DNA of 53,160 bases, the filler included, from Sluysia triapertura (taxonomy: Eukaryota), in the NCBI GenBank assembly GCA_046118255.1. It is 4 parts of 4 records of this genome, joined end to end, with 100 filler letters (N's around TTAATTAATTAA, not from the genome) between each part and the next. Parts side by side here need not be neighbours in the genome. Positions count along the whole stretch, not along the records: positions 30,846 to 41,721 come from JBJNIA010192196.1; 3 more parts are not named here. The stretch is one strand, 5' to 3'. Shown one piece after another: positions 30,846 to 41,721 of the stretch (position 1 is the first letter of the stretch; each line of letters starts with the position of its first letter). The position numbers were made by a program, and so were the translations under genes. The notes beneath the pieces were generated by a model, which ran no database searches, had not been told where the DNA came from, and worked only from the letters and a program-made list of their open reading frames with translations.

Positions 30846-32024
30846 TTAACAATTTTATTGTAATCGTGTTCACTTTTATTTCGTTGGCCTAAAATATTTG
30901 AATAACATAATTACCATTAGTTCTTTGATATTATTAGTGTCTGTTGCGTCACTCCTGGTTGTTGTATTTTTAAAGAAATTGTAATATTTTCATTATTATT
31001 GTAATTGCTATTTTACTTTTGCTATTTTAGTTTCATTTTGTGAAGACTCATATTAATAATAATAAATTTTATTTTGGTTTTTATTTAATAGTACATTATT
31101 GGTTTTGTTTTGATTTGATTGTCAAGAAATTTAAAGTTCGTATAATAGTTATTGACATAGTTACAAAAGAAGATTACGATAAAATTATACTTGATATACT
31201 ATCTATTGAAATTATTAAGGTTTAAAACAGTCAAAATAATAATAGTGAGTCTTAATAATTCATAAGTTTTAAACACGCAACACTATCAAACTCTCCATTT
31301 ATTGATTTATATCTACGTGATTTTTTTGCATATAAGTTTTAAAATCTATAATAATATTAGATTTAAAATAGACTTAAAACCGACTCCTTAGGTATTTTGT
31401 AAGTTAAGTCTTTAGAAGTAACACTTGCATGTACATAAAAAATATAACTATTTTTAAAAATTTCATTCACGATAGTTATGTGAGCAGTAAGCCTAAAATG
31501 AATAAATTGATTTCTGTCTTTAACCCATTTAATTGACTTTTTGTATTCAAAAAATTCATATTTATACTATTTTATACCTATCCAAATAATGTAACTATAT
31601 TTTAAAAATATATTTATATTTTTCATATATTCTTATTATTTATATTCCTTTGAAAGAATTGTAGCATCTAAATTTTATAAGATAAAAATCAAGCAATAAT
31701 AATGTAACAAGCTTTACGTAAGATAAGCATATTAAGTTACAGATGTGCTTAAATATAATATAATTTTATTTTGTATATTTTTTATTAAATATTTTTATTA
31801 ACTTGCTCTTTAAAAATTTTGTTTCCGGTTTTAGTTCGATTGCTAGATACATTTTAAAATCTAAACTAAAAAATACTTTTAATTGTTAAAATTATATAGA
31901 TTGCATAATTGTATATAAATTTAATTAGTGTTATCATTTATAACTTTTAAGAATTTTGATGTGCATATGTAATATTTTATTTTAATTTTGTAATTTTAAA
32001 TACAGTTTTAGTTTTATAAATTTA

Positions 32025-34542
32025 ATGTCTGTTGATACATTTTCATCTAGAGGTTCCTTACCGAAGAGACCAAAGCCTTTTACAGGTTTTTTGCATTTTC
32101 AATTTAATAAATATTTTAGATACCAGTTTTAATCTCGCCAATTTTGAAGCGAAATGGTCTAAAGTTGTAATTGAAATAAGAAATATTTTTAAAAGTGAAC
32201 CAGTATCACTTGGATACACGAATCTTCTTAGAGTAATTAAATTAATAATATAAATCTTTTTTAGATTATCAGATGTTTTGATGGTGAAATTTGTGGACAA
32301 ATATTTGATAATTTGAGGAAATTATGCTTGGAACACGTTAATCGGTGTGCACCTGCACTTTATGAATATCCTTTTATCATTATTTTTATTATTTAATTTT
32401 TATATATTAAATTTTTCCTTAACTACATTATTTACAGATAAAAATACTGATTCAAAATTTCTAACTCACATTGATAACAGTTGGAAAGATTATTGTTCAA
32501 AAATGGAAGTTCTTCGACGCTTGTTTATGTACATAGATCATAAATATTGGTCAAGTAATCCAAATTATATTTCATTTTGGGACATGACAATGCGTTTATG
32601 GCATGATATGTTCATTTCTACAAATTTATTAAATAAAATCGTCGTACTTAATTTGAGACAAGTTCATGCTCAAAGAAATGGTAATAATGAATATTTAGAA
32701 TTAACGAAATCTATTGTTAATATGCTTAAAAGTTTGGATCTTTATAATAAGTTTTGGGAACATAAATACATGGAAGAAGCATGTCACTTTTATTCTAAAG
32801 ATTGTGAAATCAAAATGAAGGAATTACCTGATGTGCGATATTTAAAATATGTGATGAGCAAATTGGAAGAAGAAAAAGTAAGGTCAAATGATTATTTAGA
32901 GGGAGATAGTATCAGGATTCAATTTCGTGATGCTTTGATTAATATTATTTTGAAGCCACAATTAGATACTTTATTGGGTGTGTTTTTTAATGGCATTATG
33001 AAAGAAAATGACTTAGATAATTTAAAGACACTTTATAGTGTAACTGAATTAATATACGCTAAGCCTAATGAATTTACCGGTATTAGTTGTTTACGAAGTC
33101 ATTTTAAAAATTATATTATGAAAGTTGGATTAACAATAGTGGAAAATAGTGGAGATGATGTTGAAAAAGATAAAAAAATGACACAGCAGTTATTAGATTT
33201 AAAAGATAATTTAGATAAAATAGTCGTTGAATGTTTTAAAAACGATTTAGTATTTCATAAAACTGTACGAGATTGTTTTGAAAGCTTTGTAAATTCTCGT
33301 CCTAACAAACCTGCTGAATACCTGGCAAAATTTTTGGATTCTAAGTTAAGATCTGGAAATAAAAACTTAACTGAAGAAGCAATGAACATAATTATGGATA
33401 AGGTAATGACATTATTTCGTTTTATTACTGGTAAAGATGTATTTGAAGCCTTTTATCTAAAAGATCTTGCAAAACGATTGTTAATGGGTAAAAGTGCTTG
33501 TGTGGATACAGAAAAAGCAATGCTGGAAAAACTAAAGCAAGAATGTGGCCCTAATTATACGCGTAAAATGGAAGTAATGTTTTCTGATATTGAAAACAGT
33601 CAACGACTAAGCTCTCAGTTTAATAAAAGTCAATCTTTGAAAACAGTTTTGTCAGAAATAGATCCTGAAAGTCCTTACAAAGATGCTGAAATGAGTGTTC
33701 ATGTCATTTGTAATGCAACATGGCCTAATTTAGGTGGTTGCAAAACATTAAATTTACCAAGTCCATTGTTGAAATTACAGGAAGCGTTTTGTCAATTTTA
33801 TAATAGTGCTCATACTGGTCGAAAATTAATTTTTGAACCTCATTTGGGTACTTGTGTAGTGCGTGCTTATTTCCCAAAAGGTAGGAAGGAATTACAGGTA
33901 TCAGAATTTCAATGTATGGTTTTAATGCAATTTAATGGCGAAGGAGAAATAAGTTTAACTTATCAACAATTAGAAGATGCGCTGAAAATTGAACCAGAAG
34001 AAATGAAGAAAACTGTTCTTTCGTTGTCGGTTGGTAAAGGTCAAAAAGTGCTTTGTAAGAAACCAATGGTAAGTATTCAAACAATTCAAATTAATATAAT
34101 TAATTTAGACTACTGTTTTGGAATCAACTGATGTTTTTACATTCAATGAAAATTTCCAGCATAAACTTACTAAAATAAAGTTTAATCAGATTCAAACAAA
34201 AGAAACGGTTAGTATTTCAATTCATTTATTGTCATTATGTACACGTAACTACAGAAAGAAGAGCAACAGGCGACCGAAGAACAAGTATTTATTGATCGGC
34301 AATCGCATTTGGATTGTTATATTGTAAGATTAATGAAGTCTCACCGAAAATTGGAACATACAGCTTTAGTAACGGAAATTTTAAAAGAGGTGCGATTTCC
34401 GGTGAAGGTTAGTGCTTAATTTTATAAAGAGTACTTTTAAATTTAGGGAGCGGATATAAAGAAACGTATTGAGCATTTGATTGAAAGGGATTTTATGTCA
34501 CGAGATTCTTCGAATCCTAGTCTTTATCATTATGTTGCTTAA
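32025..34542 (+). CDS. CUL4: Cullin-4, 751 aa; exons 32025-32085, 32120-32232, 32265-32365, 32436-34068, 34109-34207, 34255-34407, 34447-34542
   Basis: CUL4-type motifs [54 protein letters not shown], neddylation site IVRLMKS and C-terminal [18 protein letters not shown]. All seven exons splice in frame (2256 nt). Confidence 0.95.
32366..32435 (+). other. U12-type (minor spliceosome) AT-AC intron, 70 nt, CUL4 intron 3
   Basis: 5'ss ATATCCTTT; branch site TTTTCCTTAAC ending at 32423, about 13 nt before the terminal AC. Removal restores the frame (TAT GA|A GAT AAA). Confidence 0.93.
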
Positions 34543-35249
34543 TATTGTCATGTTTCTCTGAAATACATAATTCAAGTTTTTGAATGTTATGGTATTTGTT
34601 AATTTTTTAAAAAGCAGAAAATAAAGAGTATCATTCTTATCGAATATTTAAATAATAAATATTAAAATAGTTTTATTAATTTGGTTTCAAAATAATTTAT
34701 TTATTTTTAACACAAATGAAAAATAAGTTTTAATGTCATATTCGAAAATACGACAATAACATGGGAAAGAATATTTCGTTGCAAAGAATTTTTGGCATTG
34801 AAACTAAAAGTTTTATGAAATAAATTGTATTCATTAACATTGTTAAAGAATAAAAGTGAAATTGACTCTAGATGTTTCATCTTCATGATCCCTCTTTCAA
34901 TAATGTTTTACATTTTATATCATGTTTTTATTCAGTTGAGCAATTCCAGCATACTTGTTAAAGTATTAATAAAACTAATATTGAGTTAGAAAACATTGGA
35001 GATAAATTAAATTCCAACGACATTTTGGCATTTTTAACACGAATAGATGACAACCGGGAATTATCGATGTTTGTATTTAAAACAAAAGTTTTGCTTAAGG
35101 AATCATTTTCTAAACGTAGTAAAACTATAAAAAAAATGATGAATGAACACAGAATTAATGGATGAATATCAAAACGGGTTTGGTCAACTCGTTAGAGTAC
35201 TCCCAAAGTGTGGCATGAAATTTTTGCTTTACCGAAAATATTTAAATTG

Positions 35250-36290
35250 TGTGTGTGTGTGTCTAATACTTTTATTTTTCGAAATTATTAAACTAAAATT
35301 CGATAACTAAGTAATTCAAAATCTCGATATATTCTTTATATTATCACAAAATTATAACTAAAATATCTTTTTTAACGATACAATTTATATTAACAATAAA
35401 AATTAATCTTTATAACAATATGAATTATTCTTCAGTGACAAATGTGTCTTTTGTACTTTTTTTATTTTTACAAATTATCAATTAAAAACTCAATAATTAA
35501 ATAAATTCAGAATCTCGCTATATCACATATTTACAACTAAAAAATATAAATTATTCTTTAAAAACAAATCACAACCAGGGGTGACACAACCTATTCAAAT
35601 ATTAATACAAAAATATAATCAGTACAAAATAATTCACTAACTTTTATTCCTACTTTATACTAAACTATTTGATTTTAAAGTTGATTGCTAAAGAAATAAC
35701 TTCAGTTCCACTGTTATCCATTTATGAACTGAAGCAGCATCCCTACAGCTAGAAAGTTTTCTTTAATCTTAATTCTTATCTATATCTCTTTTCTGTTTTC
35801 TAACTTTACGAAAAAAGGTAACTGCTTATATAGTTCTTTATGATGCTTTTAGGAAATTAAAAATCAGAAATTGAACAAGATAGAAATTAAAGCTGTCTAT
35901 TCTCTTTTAGTCGGTAATAAGCCAACTAGTTTTACTGAATGAATTTCGGCAGCAATTCAATCTCATTTTTATTATCTAAAGATGATAGGATTTGTGGTAA
36001 ACAATTCCTTTATCTTAATATCACCTAATTAAAATTTAAAATCATTGTTACATTGCTTTTATAATAATAACGCAATTTGTCAACTTAATTTATCATTAAA
36101 ATTAATGAAATAATAAATTTATTTCTAACAAGAGTATTCTGCATTAATATGTTGTGCGTTACCCGTACGTTGCACATCAATTCAATAGCATATTTAACTT
36201 TAATTTTAAATTATAAAAATTGATTAAAATAACTAATTTTTACGCTATCTTCGTTAACGTGCTTCGCAATACTAATAAAATCAATAATAA
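35250..36290 (-). mobile_element. LTR family B, copy 3 (truncated)
   Basis: Extended reverse-complement match to about 6530-7400 (e.g. TTGATTGCTAAAGAAATAAC, TATTCTCTTTTAGTCGGTAATAAGCC, ATCTCGATATATTCTTTATATTATCACAA). Confidence 0.65.
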
Positions 36291-36299
36291 TACGAAAAT

Positions 36300-38125
36300 A
36301 TATTAACTATAAATTGAAAATCTTCGCCCGAAGGCAGTAAATACATAATGATTTTCATACAAAATTTGTTTTTGTTTTTTGTTTGTTAGAGTATGAAGGG
36401 ATCAATTAAATATTTAGAATGAGAAATCACATCATTGATCATTAGCAGTTGTTGGTTCTGGGGCAGGAACTGACACTGGATCCAGACTTAGGATTGGTTG
36501 TTGGATTGTAGCTGCTGTTGGATTTGGAGTAAGGGCAGCATCACTGCGGCGAAGTTTTGAGTACCGCAAAAGTACGTGATTAACGTAGATACGATATGAC
36601 ATCTTCACCATATCCGTAGAGATATCTACCAAGAGCTTGTTAATACCACATTTGCTGAATTTGAAGTTTTTAAGAATACTTACATTTTCGGGGTTCATTG
36701 TGCCAAGTATGGGAAATTTTAACTTTACGACGAACAATTTTACTTAGATATTGAGAAAAAGGTGAATATTTTAAAAAAATTTCTTTTGTGAATATTAGAG
36801 TAAGAATGAATTTTGTCGAATGGGGTTTTAACATCAATTAAGAACACTTGTCAAATTTACAGAGTAAGTCAGGGCGTTGCCGTTAATTTCATCAAGAACA
36901 TCAGAGCGCTCTGAACATCACAAGTGATGGGGTGAGCAGGGATTGACACTTCAAGGATTGCCAACGATAGAAATGAGATAGCCCAGTTAGTTGGTAGAAA
37001 GCCTGGGTAAGGTTATCCTTTTCATCCCTTGTGAAAGAATAAGAAGTATCTTGAAGGGAAAGATTGATAGAAAAGGAATCTTCAGCAAAGGCAATCAAAA
37101 CCTGAATGTTATGTTTAGATTTCAATGCTTTACAATAATCCCTAACATTGGCCCAAAGCGTAGATTTAGAGGGATACCAGAGAGTCAAGGGTTGTAATAA
37201 AGTCAGGATTCCGAAAGTATAGTTTGGCATCTAATTTAAGGTAATCAAGAGAAAAATAGCGTAACGTTTTATCAGTGGAGGTAAAAATTCTGCAGCAGTG
37301 AACTACTGTCTGAATTAAGTATTCACTGTGGAGGGAGGTAAAACCAATACCTCCCAAGTCAACAGTGGTGTAGAAGAAGTCAATAGAGGTAAAACGAAAA
37401 TGTATTTCAAGGACAGGTCGAAGAATGTTTCTAAAACTCCTATCAAAGGAGATAATATCATTAGAGTGCATTTTTGCCTATCTAAGCTGGATTCTTAGAA
37501 TTTTACATGCTCTAAAACGATAAGGAAATCGTGAAAGTATAAAGATTTTTATTGACCTAATTTTCTGTACTGGATGAAGGCGAGAGTTTTAAATCTTTGA
37601 ACAATAAGAGAGAGCAGTTTGAAGTAGATATTTTATTGATAGATATTTAGCATTACCAATTTTTGAGCCGAGATAGGTGTAGTGATTTTTAGAATCAATA
37701 ATAGGAACTGGAATGTTATAAATACTCAAAGGTAGTTCTACATTTTTCTTAAGAGTATTCAGATAACCACATTTATCAGGGCGAAATTTCAGATTGATGT
37801 AAGAATAAATAATAGAAAGTTCATTTAAAGTATATTGTCTTGATTGATAAGAATCAGATACAATCATTATGTCATCAGCAGAAGTAAGGCAGATAAAGGA
37901 ATATCCTAAATAACGAAACGTAGAGATTTCACGAATAACAAATCGAAGTAAAGGTTCAGTAGCAAGGCAGAAAAGAGTCATAGATAGGGGGCAGCTTTGC
38001 TTAACACCAACTTTAACTGGAACAGGATTTGTGACGCCAAGAGAGTAAGTACAAGAATTATAACTATATAGGTTCTTCAGTAATGAAAGTGTTGGTTTTT
38101 GTAAGCCAGAATTTTCAAGCAACCA
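36300..38125 (-). mobile_element. 5'-truncated, decayed non-LTR retrotransposon with C-terminal restriction-like endonuclease (NeSL/Utopia-like)
   Basis: RT motifs GVKQSCPLSMTLFCLATEPLLR, SADD (for YADD), KC, YTYLG, LGGIG. RLE motifs RPDLL..LIDVKTPFD and LGTMNPEN..DMVKMSYRIYVNHV. Many frameshifts. Confidence 0.85.
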
Positions 38126-39389
38126 AAAGCATTTGAATAATCATTCCAACAAACAAACAATGGAGATCTTGGCACGTGAGTTATGCTAGCTTGTAAAATG
38201 GTTTCAAATTCAACATATCATACCGCATTCAAAAGTTATTCACGAAAACGTACTTTTTCTTAATTGAGTTAAGATTTTAATTAATTAATATATTTTTAGA
38301 CTGAATATTATTCTATATTTAAAGGTTTTAATAAGGTTCCAAAGTTATTTAGTAATTTAAAAGGCATTCAGGAGGCTCTAGATGTTTTCACCTTTACCTC
38401 TCTGATTCCTTTTTCTATTTATTCATGTTTATTATTACCACATTAAACTTATCTTTATTATTTTGAACAAAGATTTTATATTTCAAACATTTTGATGATT
38501 TTATACATTTTATAATATTACTCGAATATCTTTGATGCTTAAGGTTTCCAGAATACATAAAAATTAATGGAGTCTTAGATGATATCAAAATTAACAAGCT
38601 CAAGGGTATTCTAATGCCTTCAAAGATTTTTAAAGTCCATTTCAAGCCTCCACTATGTCTCGACACCTTATATAGTTCTTTGGAATATCAAGGTATTCTT
38701 TAGCTGTTATAATTATTATAGATTTTTTATTTTCATGATTCTTTTTCCAACAATGTTTATAATTTCAATCTATCACTTTGTATCAACTCTTTCTTCACTT
38801 TGTGATTCTATGTTTCTTACTAATATCCTAATCCACAGTTGGACAATCTCAACATATCTCATTCCCGACAAAATTCTCTGACCGCTGACAATACGATAAA
38901 TTATACTGTTTGTGAGAGTCCAACAGCCTTAACACTTTACATTATTATTCAATAATCCGTAACACTTTATATTATTATTTATTGTGATTATACATTTATT
39001 ATTTAATTATGATTTTATCATTTATTTAATTTTATGAGTAAAAAATTATTATGTAAAATATTATTGTAAAAAATTATTAATTAAAATATTAAAATATTAT
39101 ATTGTAAAAAAATTAACTAATTAAAATATTATATAATTTAAATAAATATGATTTAAATAAATATGATTTAAATAAAAGTTATTTTTGTTTAATAATATTA
39201 AATTATTTTTGTTTAAATGAATTACTTTTGTATACGTGTGAGCAATATGGTGATTGAAGACAATATTGGGTATAAAATCCAATGAATTTTGTGGGTTGAA
39301 CACAATTTTGTCGTCAACAATTTGTTGCTCACCAAACTTCGAATCAATTCCATGAAAATGGTAAGTTTCTTTTTGATAAGATTTTTAAT

Positions 39390-39766
39390 CTCCTCACCGT
39401 AAGAAGGGAGGAGTAAACTAATACTTAAATTAATTGTGTATTTTTTGTACTTATACCGTAACCGGATAAGTCAAATTGAATTTAAAATCTTATAAAGCTA
39501 AATTCTTTAGAATTTAAGCAATATAAAATAGTTATTTTTATTATAATTAATTGTGTATAATTGATTTTTAGTTATAGTAATAAAGCTTCCTATGTTAAAT
39601 TGTTCTTTAATTAATCACTAAAGTCTTATAAAACGCTAGACCGTAATAAGGCTAGCTTAATATTATAAAATCAATAATTGAGTTTTCAATAATTAGACCG
39701 CAACAGGCTAATTTAACATTTTTTATTAACATTTTATTAACAAGTTAGACCGTAAAAAGGCTAACT
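39390..39766 (+). other. Array of five covarying bulged-A stem-loops (stem-A-CC-GYAA(N2-3)-GG-stem)
   Basis: 39390-39413, 39449-39471, 39635-39656, 39691-39713 and 39743-39766. Each has a different but perfectly complementary 5-6 bp lower stem. Confidence 0.85.
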
Positions 39767-40080
39767 CAAAATCATTAAGTTTAAAATAATTTTAATATTT
39801 TAAATAAACTAAAATTATCTTCAAACGATCCTTATCTTATCCTTTGTTTGATTTTATTTTGCACAGTAAATAATAACAGGCCGCCGTCGTTCAGACTTAA
39901 GTCGTTTTGTTAGGTCGAATTCTTCTAGGCTTATTTGCATTGTAGGTTAGGTGAAACCAAATCGTCTTTGCAGTACTAAGGTACATTATTGTATATAAAA
40001 AATTACTTTTTAATATTTTTCTTTTATTTTTTTATGAATTGTCCTCTTTATGTAAACTTTAATTATTCTTTGTAATCCAG

Positions 40081-41389
40081 TACACACCAAACCAAAACAC
40101 CACAAGCAAGAACCATCAATCAAGTCAAAGTCTTTTACTCTTCCATTGATAAGTTATGCGTCGAAAATACTACACCTAAATTCCTTCCTAACTCGTTTGC
40201 CACGGACTGTAAATTAAAGTCCGAACTAAATGATAATGTGGCAACCCACATCTTTGCTTTATCGTCAGAGGTACCTTTAGTTTCTCTACAAGGGTTATCC
40301 AACGCACCTGACGAATTCGACACAATGTCCATAGTAGCTGCGCGCGGGGCGATTAAGGTCACTTTAGAGTTCGAAAAAATCCCTTTGTTGTTGCGCCTCG
40401 AAAATCATTCAACTTTCCATCTTTCAAATTTATCTAAAAATTGTAAGGTTATGGTAGAATTTCCCACTCATCTTGCTTTTCTCTACTGCTCTTTTCGCTC
40501 CTTCTTTCCTGCCGTTTGCTGAGGATCTCGACAATATAAGTAGATGGAAAAAACGGTTCCTCATATACGCATGTTCCTCCTCCTTCCGCGTATGATGAGG
40601 ATGGACTTATGTTTGTGGCGTTCCAATATGCCACAGATTTCTTAAATAACCCACAATTGATTTGCGTGACCTGCACTTCGTACAGTCGTCAATTCCACAC
40701 CGAGGCTCGCATAAAACCTCGATGCCGCATCCAGAATTTCCGCCGAAACATTCAGGTGGTTACAGATGTCGACGACATCCGGCCTCAGATCATTGGGATC
40801 CTTCGAAACAAAATTCTAGTCTCATTAAACTCTAAATTTCTCATTGAGACATTAAATATTCCTTTTGGGCTACTACGTGGGATAATAAACTTGTCCAATC
40901 ATAACTTGGTTCCGTTTTCCACAGATGATATTTTCATTAGAGCGCGCCAAACGTTGCGGCTCATTTTTCCAGTTTCATCAGTGTTAACATGCAGGCAGAT
41001 GGCCTCAGAACTGGTGACCCTGCTTGATTTCATTAGGGAGCGAGACTTGCAATTAATTTCTCGCTGTAATAACCCTCTACCCGTTCTATTTAAAAAACTG
41101 TCCACCATCCCTAATCCTGCTTCTAAGCTTTCTTCTCCTCCTCCAAAAAAAGGCAAAACTCACCCCTTCTTCCTCTACTTCTTTTTCTATTTTTTCTTTA
41201 ACTTCACCATCATCTACTCCATCATCGACCAAACCATCCACAATTACATCATCAAAAATTTCGCCATGTACTAATTTACCAACGACGGCAGCAAAATATC
41301 AGGAATTACGAACAATATCCCCACAGAAATTCCGAAACGATAATGGCACCCAGTGTCTATTCAGATACGACTACTTACTTCAAGATTAG
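40081..41389 (+). pseudogene. Orphan ORF of LTR element, copy B (~430 codons, about 3 frameshifts)
   Basis: Includes track ORFs 40238-40522 and 40609-41274. Protein-level homology with copy A throughout. A frameshift in the A7 run near 41145 gives PPPKKAK and a Ser/Thr-rich tail ending in TAG at 41389. Confidence 0.75.
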
Positions 41390-41721
41390 GACTCAGTAAT
41401 AATAATGTGATTTATTATAATAATAATTTTTTTTACTGACAACGATAATAATGTGATTAACAATAATAATAAATTTTTTTTATATTCGAGGACGAATTTT
41501 CCTGAAAGGGAAAGTAATGTACATATGTAAATTATTTTTATTTGTGTTTTTATATATGTGCTATTTTATAAATATTATTATTACTATAATTAAAATATAA
41601 ATTAAATAAATATTATAAAAAATTAAATAAAGATTAAACAATATAAAAATATAAAATTAAAATAAATTAAAAAGAAAATAAAGTAATTTGTTTAAATAAA
41701 GTAAATTATTTAGTTTTAGAA

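What the first reader, a model, noticed from the sequence alone, without database searches (positions are those of the whole stretch)
39390..39766. Array of five covarying bulged-A hairpins with MS2-operator-like architecture in a retroelement leader/intron
Seen: CTCCTC-A-CC-GTAAGAA-GG-GAGGAG; ACTTAT-A-CC-GTAACC-GG-ATAAGT; GCTAG-A-CC-GTAATAA-GG-CTAGC; AATTAG-A-CC-GCAACA-GG-CTAATT; AGTTAG-A-CC-GTAAAAA-GG-CTAACT. The lower stems differ in sequence but stay perfectly paired, while the bulged A, the CC/GG closing pairs and the GYAA loop start are invariant. Spacing is about 52-60 nt, with possible decayed units near 39500 and 39577. The array lies between a GTAAGT donor (39361) and an acceptor (40080). 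Known: a 5' bulged A two pairs below the loop is the geometry of the MS2 coat-protein operator, and retroviruses place packaging or export signals in sequence retained only in unspliced RNA. Inference: a multivalent protein-binding RNA array (packaging, export or localisation) marking the unspliced genomic RNA, possibly bound by the element's own orphan protein or a helper Gag.
Basis: partly seen in the sequence, partly recalled or inferred. Interest (0 to 1): 0.9.

Follow-up and report, generated by a model that had tools for sequence, protein, structure and literature searches.

The report
Hairpin array in retroelement leader
Five small, similarly built RNA hairpins sit in a row just inside a short, gene-poor retrotransposon copy of an AT-rich flatworm-like animal. 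Their stems differ but always pair, which points to a repeated protein-binding signal of a kind not yet catalogued, though only this one copy could be examined.

Summary
Five hairpins lie on the + strand at 39390-39413, 39449-39471, 39635-39656, 39691-39713 and 39743-39766. Each has a 5-6 bp variable stem, an unpaired A, two C-G pairs and a 6-7 nt loop starting G-Y-A-A. The core motif occurs 5 times against 0.15 expected. A covariance model built from three hairpins finds the other two and nothing else. 39 of 40 pair cells are Watson-Crick, and 6 of 8 pairs show changes on both sides. Arms and spacers are otherwise randomised, while the core is 94% identical.

The array lies in the leader of a probable gag/pol-less LTR-type element on the + strand: a 5' LTR from 38983, a broken orphan ORF, a purine tract and a 3' LTR from 41518. 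The nearby reverse transcriptase is a separate non-LTR fragment on the other strand.

The intron is unproven, and the proposed exon-1 ATG is out of frame with the ORF. The likeness to the MS2 operator covers only the bulge position. Rfam has no match.

My best reading is a multivalent protein-binding signal on the element's RNA, for packaging, export or splicing control. No other copy or leader of a relative could be found, so family-level conservation is untested.

The parts
38983..39352 (+). Probable 5' LTR. Its start is fixed by likeness to the 3' LTR start. Only 38996-39208 is backed by similarity. The 3' end near 39352 is a guess, because the 3' LTR is cut by the edge of the piece. A TATAAAA lies at about 39271.
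   Evidence: score 91 against a piece-wide median of 30 and 95th percentile of 51; 84% identity without gaps, 70% with gaps..
39361..39366 (+). Not verified.
   Evidence: sequence only.
39390..39766 (+). The array: about seven units of 48-64 nt, five of them with an intact hairpin.
39390..39413 (+). Hairpin 1: 6 bp, bulged A, two C-G pairs, 7-nt loop.
   Evidence: -12.1 kcal/mol; 33.6 bits.
39449..39471 (+). Hairpin 2: 6 bp, bulged A, two C-G pairs, 6-nt loop. It can also form a third upper pair with a 4-nt loop.
   Evidence: -7.6 kcal/mol; held out of the model, 19.3 bits, E 1.7e-3.
39497..39519 (+). Unit 3: AT-only palindrome in the expected register, without the core.
39570..39593 (+). Unit 4: resembles a hairpin unit but has lost the core and the pairing.
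   Evidence: (no fold).
39635..39656 (+). Hairpin 3: 5 bp, bulged A, two C-G pairs, 7-nt loop.
   Evidence: -9.5 kcal/mol; 34.3 bits.
39691..39713 (+). Hairpin 4: 6 bp, bulged A, two C-G pairs, 6-nt loop starting GCAA.
   Evidence: -6.1 kcal/mol; held out of the model, 19.8 bits, E 1.2e-3.
39743..39766 (+). Hairpin 5: 6 bp, bulged A, two C-G pairs, 7-nt loop.
   Evidence: -8.0 kcal/mol; 34.5 bits.
40079..40080 (+). The relative also has CAG directly before its ORF. Not verified.
40076..41271 (+). Orphan ORF of the element, broken. It is read in two frames (at least one frameshift), has no stop inside either open stretch, and has no in-frame start codon at its head.
   Evidence: only relative is P0121, E 1.4e-8; N-terminal stretch also matches P0121, E 2e-5; no other relatives, no Pfam or PDB match.
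41399..41480 (+). Two copies of a 46-nt repeat between the ORF and the purine tract. The relative has 64-nt repeats in the same place.
   Evidence: (D6).
41504..41514 (+). Purine tract, a candidate PPT. It is preceded by GAGGAC, as in the relative.
41518..41721 (+). Start of the probable 3' LTR (TGTA...), cut off by the edge of the piece.

Best explanation
The array is a cis-acting signal on the + strand RNA of a short LTR-type retroelement that lacks gag and pol. It is a row of originally about seven, now five, copies of one small structured motif. The lower helix matters only as a helix. The unpaired A, the two C-G pairs and the G-Y-A-A loop start, a GNRA-like turn with 2-3 extra bases, are read by sequence. 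That is the layout expected of a hairpin recognised by a protein on single-stranded RNA. Several copies 52-59 nt apart would give avidity for an oligomerising binder. The binder is most likely the capsid or nucleocapsid protein of an autonomous helper element, less likely the element's own orphan protein or a host RNA-binding protein. The result would be that the full-length, leader-containing transcript is selected for packaging, or else exported, stabilised or kept unspliced. Shown here: the motif, its non-random clustering, its compensatory changes, its stability as RNA, and its position just inside a probable 5' LTR. Inferred: transcription of the + strand, protein binding, the binder's identity and the downstream effect.
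For: The motif occurs 5 times against 0.15 expected, all on one strand within 377 nt. A model built from three hairpins finds the other two and nothing else. 39 of 40 cells are paired, 6 of 8 pairs change on both sides, and 0 of 500 shuffles match. Stem length is uniform at 5-6 + 2 bp. Core identity is 94%, arms are 40-43% identical, and spacers are no more alike than shuffled sequence. GC is 0.45 in hairpins and 0.15 in spacers, so G/C is retained only where the motif needs it despite the AT-rich background. The one unit that lost the core also lost the pairing. As RNA the hairpins fold at -6 to -12 kcal/mol; as DNA only at -3 to -5.4. The leader position follows from the LTR pair and from the purine tract and TGTA start shared with the only relative locus. 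The variable loop position (U, U, U, C, U) is the free position of a GNRA-type turn (the fold type itself is my own knowledge). The LTR halves differ at about 16% of aligned bases, and the ORF is broken, yet no stem carries an internal mismatch. That hints at constraint after insertion or a recent origin from a constrained master copy (inference).
Against: There is only one locus. No second copy, no relative with its leader and no transcript data could be obtained, so the covariation is among five neighbouring paralogous units, not among orthologues. There is not a single G-U pair among the 39 pairs, which is a little unusual for an RNA helix family. Both strands would form the hairpins, so strand cannot be decided from pairing. 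No gag, nucleocapsid or RNA-binding domain was found in the piece. No primer-binding site was identified. The LTRs are low-complexity AT-rich DNA, and the 3' one is cut off. Unit 3 is a palindrome without the core, which a purely protein-site model does not explain.
Confidence: 0.45

Rival explanations
1. The array is a set of DNA binding sites in double-stranded DNA for a host or element-encoded factor, acting as an enhancer, insulator or silencer. This would resemble the row of Su(Hw) sites in the transcribed leader of the Drosophila gypsy element (my own knowledge). The conserved ACCGYAA...GG would be the site.
For: The position (leader just after the 5' LTR), overall length (about 380 bp) and layout (short conserved cores in AT-rich spacers) match that precedent. 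The core is 94% identical. There are no G-U pairs.
Against: A duplex-binding protein gives no reason for variable flanks to stay complementary: 6 of 8 pairs have changes on both sides. It also does not explain the uniform arm length or the constant single unpaired base. All sites share one orientation.
Confidence: 0.12
2. The array has no function. It is an old tandem repeat whose founder unit held a short palindrome, and pairing is kept or renewed by a mutational process such as template switching within quasi-palindromes or local conversion.
For: There are traces of a ~57-nt register, with shared short words in some spacers (D3, 32). Unit 3 is a different, AT-only palindrome in the same register. 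All pairs are Watson-Crick with no wobble. AT-rich DNA makes many chance hairpins.
Against: Palindrome 'correction' should erase the bulged A and the asymmetric loop, yet both are invariant in 5 of 5. The arms are as different as random sequence while the core is 94% identical. G/C is retained only in the motif against a strong AT bias. Chance hairpins elsewhere in the piece never carry the core.
Confidence: 0.18
3. The array is a host-level RNA element unrelated to retrotransposition. It would be binding sites for a host RNA-binding protein in an intron or non-coding transcript, affecting splicing of the adjacent GTAAGT donor, localisation or stability. It would have been exapted from, or merely lie next to, a dead element.
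For: The element copy is dead: its ORF is broken and its LTRs have diverged. The stems are nevertheless intact, which fits selection in place. The first hairpin begins 29 nt after a consensus donor.
Against: No host gene is identified around it. The only ORF downstream is the orphan element ORF. The splice model is unverified.
Confidence: 0.12
4. The hairpins act in single-stranded DNA, or on the minus-strand RNA. They would be recognised during replication or recombination, or by a nuclease, or would belong to the 5' part of the non-LTR element on the minus strand.
For: The pairing is equally possible on both strands, and the minus-strand fold of the region has the better z-score (-3.9 against -2.5). 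The non-LTR reverse transcriptase fragment lies on the minus strand, so the array sits 5' of it in that element's own orientation.
Against: As DNA the hairpins are only marginally stable, at -3 to -5.4 kcal/mol. No open stretch with detectable homology links the RT fragment to the array across the 20% GC, ORF-free stretch between them. The probable LTR start at 38983 separates the two.
Confidence: 0.06

Closest known systems
Coat-protein operator hairpins of RNA phages (MS2/R17 type, PP7 type)
   Same: A short helix whose sequence is free, a single unpaired A on the 5' side two pairs below the loop, and specific loop bases. Engineered tandem arrays of such hairpins have a similar spacing. The comparison with the phage hairpins is from my own knowledge; no comparator was fetched.
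   Different: The loop is 6-7 nt starting G-Y-A-A, not a 4-nt loop. The upper pairs are invariant C-G. The host is an animal. No coat-like protein is present and no Rfam family matches. This is an analogy of design, not membership.
Packaging (psi) hairpins in the leaders of retroviruses and LTR retroelements, and the bulged-A encapsidation hairpin of the yeast L-A virus
   Same: The location is between the 5' LTR and the first ORF, downstream of a candidate splice donor. The hairpins have conserved loops and free stems, and a non-autonomous element would need such a handle to use a helper. This is my own knowledge of those systems; the position here comes.
   Different: The known signals are one to four different hairpins, not five copies of one motif in tandem. 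No gag or nucleocapsid gene is present here, and binding is untested.
boxB-type hairpins bound by arginine-rich peptides
   Same: A GNRA-like turn with extra loop bases on a short G/C-closed helix, read by a small protein motif (my own knowledge). The loop's free position varies as a GNRA turn allows.
   Different: boxB has no bulged A and is not arrayed. No such peptide was found in the window. A very basic arginine-rich tail does exist on the ORF upstream of the relative's orphan ORF in L122, but that ORF is absent from the window.
Su(Hw) site array in the leader of the Drosophila gypsy element
   Same: A tandem row of short conserved cores in AT-rich spacers, a few hundred bp long, in the transcribed leader of an LTR element (my own knowledge).
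   Different: That array works as duplex DNA and has no complementary flanks. Here the flanks covary.

Membership tests
MS2-type coat-protein operator | Single unpaired purine on the 5' side, two pairs below the loop | tested here: met
   All five hairpins have A, then two pairs, then the loop.
MS2-type coat-protein operator | Four-base loop with fixed adenines | tested here: not met
   Loops are 6-7 nt starting G-Y-A-A. Only hairpin 2 can form a 4-nt loop.
MS2-type coat-protein operator | Cognate coat protein encoded by the same genome | tested here: not met
   No Pfam family for any open stretch of the element. The orphan ORF has no PDB relative. Its structure model is unusable at pLDDT 31.
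Any Rfam family | Score at or near the gathering threshold | tested here: not met
   No hit at E<=1 in the piece. Over 39340-40100 only chance hits, 15-19 bits against thresholds of 50-114.
LTR retroelement (non-autonomous) | Two direct long terminal repeats | tested here: inconclusive
   The last 204 nt match 38996-39208 best and uniquely. The DNA is low-complexity, and the 3' repeat is cut by the edge of the piece.
LTR retroelement (non-autonomous) | Purine tract directly before the 3' LTR, and an LTR starting TG | tested here: met
   Purine tract at 41504-41514, then TGTA at 41518. The same GAGGAC, purine tract and TGTA order is seen in L122.
LTR retroelement (non-autonomous) | Primer-binding site after the 5' LTR | tested here: inconclusive
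   A TGG lies at 39359-39361, but no tRNA gene is in the piece and no tRNA of this organism is available to compare. The 5' LTR end is not fixed.
LTR retroelement (non-autonomous) | Target-site duplication | not testable with these tools
   The 3' end of the element lies outside the piece.
LTR retroelement (non-autonomous) | gag/pol absent between the LTRs | tested here: met
   No Pfam hit on any open stretch in 39850-41400 on either strand. The only RT is non-LTR type, on the other strand and outside the LTR pair.
Retroelement packaging signal | Lies in the leader, present in full-length but not in spliced RNA | tested here: inconclusive
   The leader position fits. Splicing at 39361/40080 is unverified, and the exon-1 ATG is out of phase with the ORF (frame arithmetic).
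Retroelement packaging signal | Conserved among family copies and shared with the helper element | not testable with these tools
   The source genome is not in the collections. The only relative locus lacks its leader. Scans found nothing related.
Retroelement packaging signal | Bound by the capsid or nucleocapsid protein | not testable with these tools
   This needs binding data.

The most novel reading that the evidence does not exclude
This is a natural counterpart of the engineered phage-operator arrays: a previously undescribed structured RNA motif (free helix, bulged A, two C-G pairs, GNRA-like extended loop) repeated in tandem. It would serve as the multivalent handle by which a gag-less flatworm retroelement recruits a capsid or RNA-binding protein made elsewhere. 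That would define both a new RNA family and a new RNA-protein recognition pair.
Probability: 0.2. Interest if true: 0.75.

Novelty: new variant of a known kind. Interest (0 to 1): 0.6.

Why it matters
Cis-acting RNA signals of LTR retrotransposons outside yeast, flies and vertebrate retroviruses are almost unknown. How elements without gag or pol get themselves copied is understood in only a few cases. A tandem array of one compact, covarying hairpin would be an unusually clear such signal. It would make the question testable by description alone: which copies carry it, which transcripts contain it, and which proteins sit on it. It would also add a family to the RNA catalogues from a poorly sampled animal lineage, and a compact natural RNA-protein pair may be of general interest. 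If it proves to be a single-locus oddity, it is a minor curiosity.

Tried and rejected
**Searches for other copies or relatives (all failed)**
- An exact look-up of the cullin exon product found nothing on record.
- Cullin relatives reach at most 44% identity, so the source genome is not in the protein collection.
- The C-terminal open stretch of the orphan ORF gave no hit by word-indexed search and one hit by full HMMER (P0121).
- P0121 finds only itself. Its 1964-bp contig has no leader and no motif.
- A viral-contig scan with the ORF alignment found nothing.
Both are chance matches inside a bacterial coding sequence.

**Orphan protein**
- No Pfam or PDB match.
- The AlphaFold model has pLDDT 31, so no fold search was run.

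**Ideas considered and dropped**
- tRNA or tRNA-like.
- Ribozyme or any Rfam family.
- CRISPR-like repeat-spacer array: the geometry is similar but the repeats are not identical.
- Precursors of small RNAs: the stems are too short.
- Helitron or HUH-type DNA hairpins: no matching termini or protein, and the DNA hairpins are weak.
- The 3' repeats of L122 as equivalents of the hairpins: they share a short CGTAA word but do not fold.
- The array as part of the minus-strand non-LTR element: no homology bridges the gap.

**Other dead ends**
- MAFFT misaligned the 23- and 24-nt hairpins, so the model-based alignment A7 was used instead.
- Literature searches found nothing relevant.

Full report
**1. 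The observation**

Each has a 5-6 bp lower helix, one unpaired A on the 5' side, two C-G pairs and a 6-7 nt loop that starts G-Y-A-A. One coordinate needs correcting: the third perfect stem is 39635-39656 and has 5 bp.

- **Motif frequency.** The core pattern ACCGYAA-N1-4-GG occurs five times in the window, all on the + strand and all inside the array. Dinucleotide-preserving shuffles give 0.15 +/- 0.44, and none of 100 shuffles reaches five.
- **Geometry alone is not special.** The same geometry without the core occurs 19 times in the piece against about 10 in shuffles. The other 14 are scattered AT-only hairpins. What is exceptional is the core together with the clustering.
- **Folding.** Each hairpin is the minimum-energy fold of its own RNA, at -6.1 to -12.1 kcal/mol with z -2.7 to -4.4. 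All five persist when the whole 440-nt region is folded.
- **Held-out test.** A covariance model built only from hairpins 1, 3 and 5 recovers hairpins 4 and 2 at E 1.2e-3 and 1.7e-3 in the 10.9-kb piece, both strands, filters off. The next hit has E 0.25.

**2. Covariation and constraint**

On the model-based alignment A7, 39 of 40 pair cells are Watson-Crick. Six of the eight pairs have changes on both sides, none changes on one side only, and 0 of 500 column shuffles reach any of these values. Sliding the partner by 1-3 columns drops pairing to 20-57%. RNAalifold gives the same picture.

- The arms are 40-43% identical between units, about random for this composition. The seven-base core is 94% identical. 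The 28-nt spacers on either side are no more alike than shuffled sequence.
- G+C is 0.45 in the hairpins and 0.15 in the spacers.
- So if the units arose by tandem duplication (weak traces of a ~57-nt register remain), everything has been randomised except the core and the complementarity of the arms.
- Of the two 'decayed' units, one (39570-39593) has lost both core and pairing. The other (39497-39519) is an AT-only palindrome without the core.
- Caveats: the five sequences were chosen because they pair, the alignment is fitted to the structure, and these are neighbouring paralogous units at a single locus.

**3. Surroundings**

- **Host.** The piece comes from a very AT-rich animal genome. 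A cullin-4 gene lies at 32347 to about 34541 (+) (Pfam Cullin 3e-140 and Cullin_Nedd8). Its closest relatives are flatworm proteins at only 43-44% identity. CpG is not depleted.
- **The reverse transcriptase is a separate element.** The RT fragment lies on the minus strand in one 183-codon open stretch within 37592-38140. Its best solved relatives are R2-type non-LTR proteins. The rest of that gene is not recognisable, so its breaks cannot be counted. It is not the element that carries the array.
- **The orphan ORF.** The G+C-richer block 39850-41400 holds an orphan ORF on the + strand. A full HMMER search of 1.84 billion representatives with its C-terminal open stretch found one relative: P0121, 365 aa, E 1.4e-8. 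The N-terminal open stretch matches the head of the same protein at E 2e-5. In the window this ORF is broken. It is read in two frames (at least one frameshift), has no stop inside either stretch, and has no in-frame start codon at its head.
- **The relative's locus.** P0121 sits on a 1964-bp Logan contig (L122). There it follows the end of another ORF and is followed by tandem repeats, GAGGAC, a purine tract and TGTA.
- **Same order in the window.** The window has a 46-nt repeat at 41399-41480, GAGGAC, a purine tract at 41504-41514 and TGTA at 41518.
- **LTR pair.** The 204 nt from 41518 to the edge of the piece find their best and only strong match in the piece at 38996-39208 on the same strand. 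The score is 91 against a median of 30 and a 95th percentile of 51. Identity is 84% without gap columns and 70% with them.
- **Reading.** I take this as a short LTR-type element without gag or pol: 5' LTR from 38983, leader with the array, orphan ORF, purine tract, and a 3' LTR cut by the edge.
- **What remains unknown.** The LTR evidence is moderate, because the DNA is low-complexity and one repeat is truncated. No primer-binding site could be identified, and the target-site duplication is out of reach.

**4.

A GTAAGT follows an ATG at 39358-39360, and an AG precedes the ORF at 40080. The relative also has CAG directly before its ORF, but there the ORF has its own ATG. By frame arithmetic, base 40081 is the third position of a codon in the open stretch that is homologous to P0121. 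The exon-1 ATG ends a codon. So the proposed junction is out of phase in this copy. Whether the array is intronic therefore stays open. That it lies in the leader does not depend on the splice.

**5. Mechanism**

A helix whose sequence is free, combined with an invariant bulge, invariant closing pairs and an invariant loop start, is the design of a hairpin read by a protein on a single strand.

- The only variable position in the loop start (U, U, U, C, U) is the free position of a GNRA-type turn. The fold type is my own knowledge.
- As RNA the hairpins are stable. As DNA they are marginal, at -3 to -5.4 kcal/mol, which argues against cruciforms or single-stranded DNA.
- The element is on the + strand, and a TATAAAA at about 39271 would place the array 90-470 nt into its transcript (sequence only).
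- I therefore favour a multivalent protein-binding signal on the element's full-length RNA. For an element without gag, the obvious use is to be recognised by the capsid protein of a helper. Export, stability or control of the adjacent donor are alternatives.
- The LTR halves differ at about 16% of aligned bases and the ORF is broken, yet no stem has an internal mismatch. This hints at constraint after insertion or a recent origin from a constrained master copy. The fast evolution of AT-rich repeats makes this weak.
- Against the RNA reading: there are no G-U pairs at all, and the minus strand folds at least as well.

**6. Rivals**

- **Duplex-DNA site array, as in the gypsy leader.** It fits the position but not the covarying flanks.
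- **Neutral tandem repeat with self-renewing palindromes.** It fits unit 3 and the lack of wobble pairs. It does not fit the invariant bulge and asymmetric loop, or the retention of G/C only in the motif.
- **Host-level RNA element exapted from a dead copy.** It fits the intact stems in a decayed element.
- **Belonging to the minus-strand non-LTR element, or acting as single-stranded DNA.** This is the least likely.

**7. Comparison with known systems**

Rfam has no match. The likeness to the MS2-type operator is real for the bulge position only. Loop length, loop sequence and the absence of any coat-like protein fail the membership test. The closest analogues by logic are leader packaging hairpins of retroviruses and LTR elements, the bulged-A encapsidation hairpin of the yeast L-A virus, and boxB-type GNRA-like loops. 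None of these is a tandem array of one motif. These comparisons rest on my own knowledge; no comparator sequence was fetched or typed into a tool.

**8. Limits**

No second copy, no leader of a relative and no expression data could be obtained. The orphan protein could not be modelled (pLDDT 31).

- My first checkpoint note and an early generic ORF-listing script print the same bounds. I noticed this later, have deleted nothing, and do not repeat the bounds here.
- I fetched one natural contig (L122) that carries the relative of the element's ORF. It was only read, aligned and folded as it stands.

**10. Verdict**

The retroelement-leader context is probable. The function as a protein-binding RNA array is the best inference but untested. 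The motif is uncatalogued. I score interest at 0.6, as a new variant of a known kind of signal.

Noticed in passing
window 32347-34541 (+): Cullin-4 gene: one long exon of about 590 codons plus short C-terminal exons, separated by introns of about 40-50 nt with GTTAGT donors. The best relatives are flatworm cullin-4 proteins at only 43-44% identity, so the source is a divergent, poorly sampled lineage.
   Followed up: partly
window 36435-38140 (-): Decayed non-LTR retrotransposon fragment. One 183-codon open stretch carries the C-terminal half of the RT domain, and its best solved relatives are R2-type proteins. Neighbouring open stretches have no detectable homology. It is a separate element from the one carrying the hairpins.
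   Followed up: partly
window 40076-41271 (+) and L122 510-1607: An orphan protein family with a single relative among 1.84 billion representative proteins. It has no Pfam or PDB match, is mildly basic (pI 9.2-9.5), and shares a short well-conserved stretch near the middle of the C-terminal half.
   Followed up: yes
L122 1-354: The ORF upstream of the relative's orphan ORF ends in a very basic, arginine-rich tail. It has no family match, and nothing equivalent is in the window.
   Followed up: partly
window 38927-38979 (+): A 30-nt tandem duplication directly before the probable LTR start. The second copy contains CCGTAAC, the only other CCGTAA word in the piece outside the array. I cannot say whether it is related to the hairpin core.
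   Followed up: no
window 39036-39135 (+): Inside the probable 5' LTR, GTAAAAAA-containing units recur every 28-40 nt. The covariance model gives one of them (39095-39118) its best sub-threshold score (E 0.25). It reads like a hairpin unit whose C and G have been replaced by T and A. This may be chance in low-complexity DNA.
   Followed up: partly
window 41399-41480 and L122 1625-1785: Both elements carry tandem repeats (46 nt and 64 nt) between the orphan ORF and the purine tract. The L122 units share a CGTAA word with the window's hairpin core but do not fold into hairpins.
   Followed up: partly
window 30846-41721: CpG observed/expected is about 1 across the piece, even in 20% G+C DNA. This is consistent with no CpG methylation.
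   Followed up: no
window 35248-35262: A (TG)7 microsatellite in the spacer between the cullin gene and the non-LTR fragment.
   Followed up: no
L120 and L121 (BNJU01003798.1, BNJV01000852.1): The two metagenome hits to the two-hairpin pattern are near-identical stretches of one bacterial coding sequence. They are pure chance matches and have no hairpin.
   Followed up: yes
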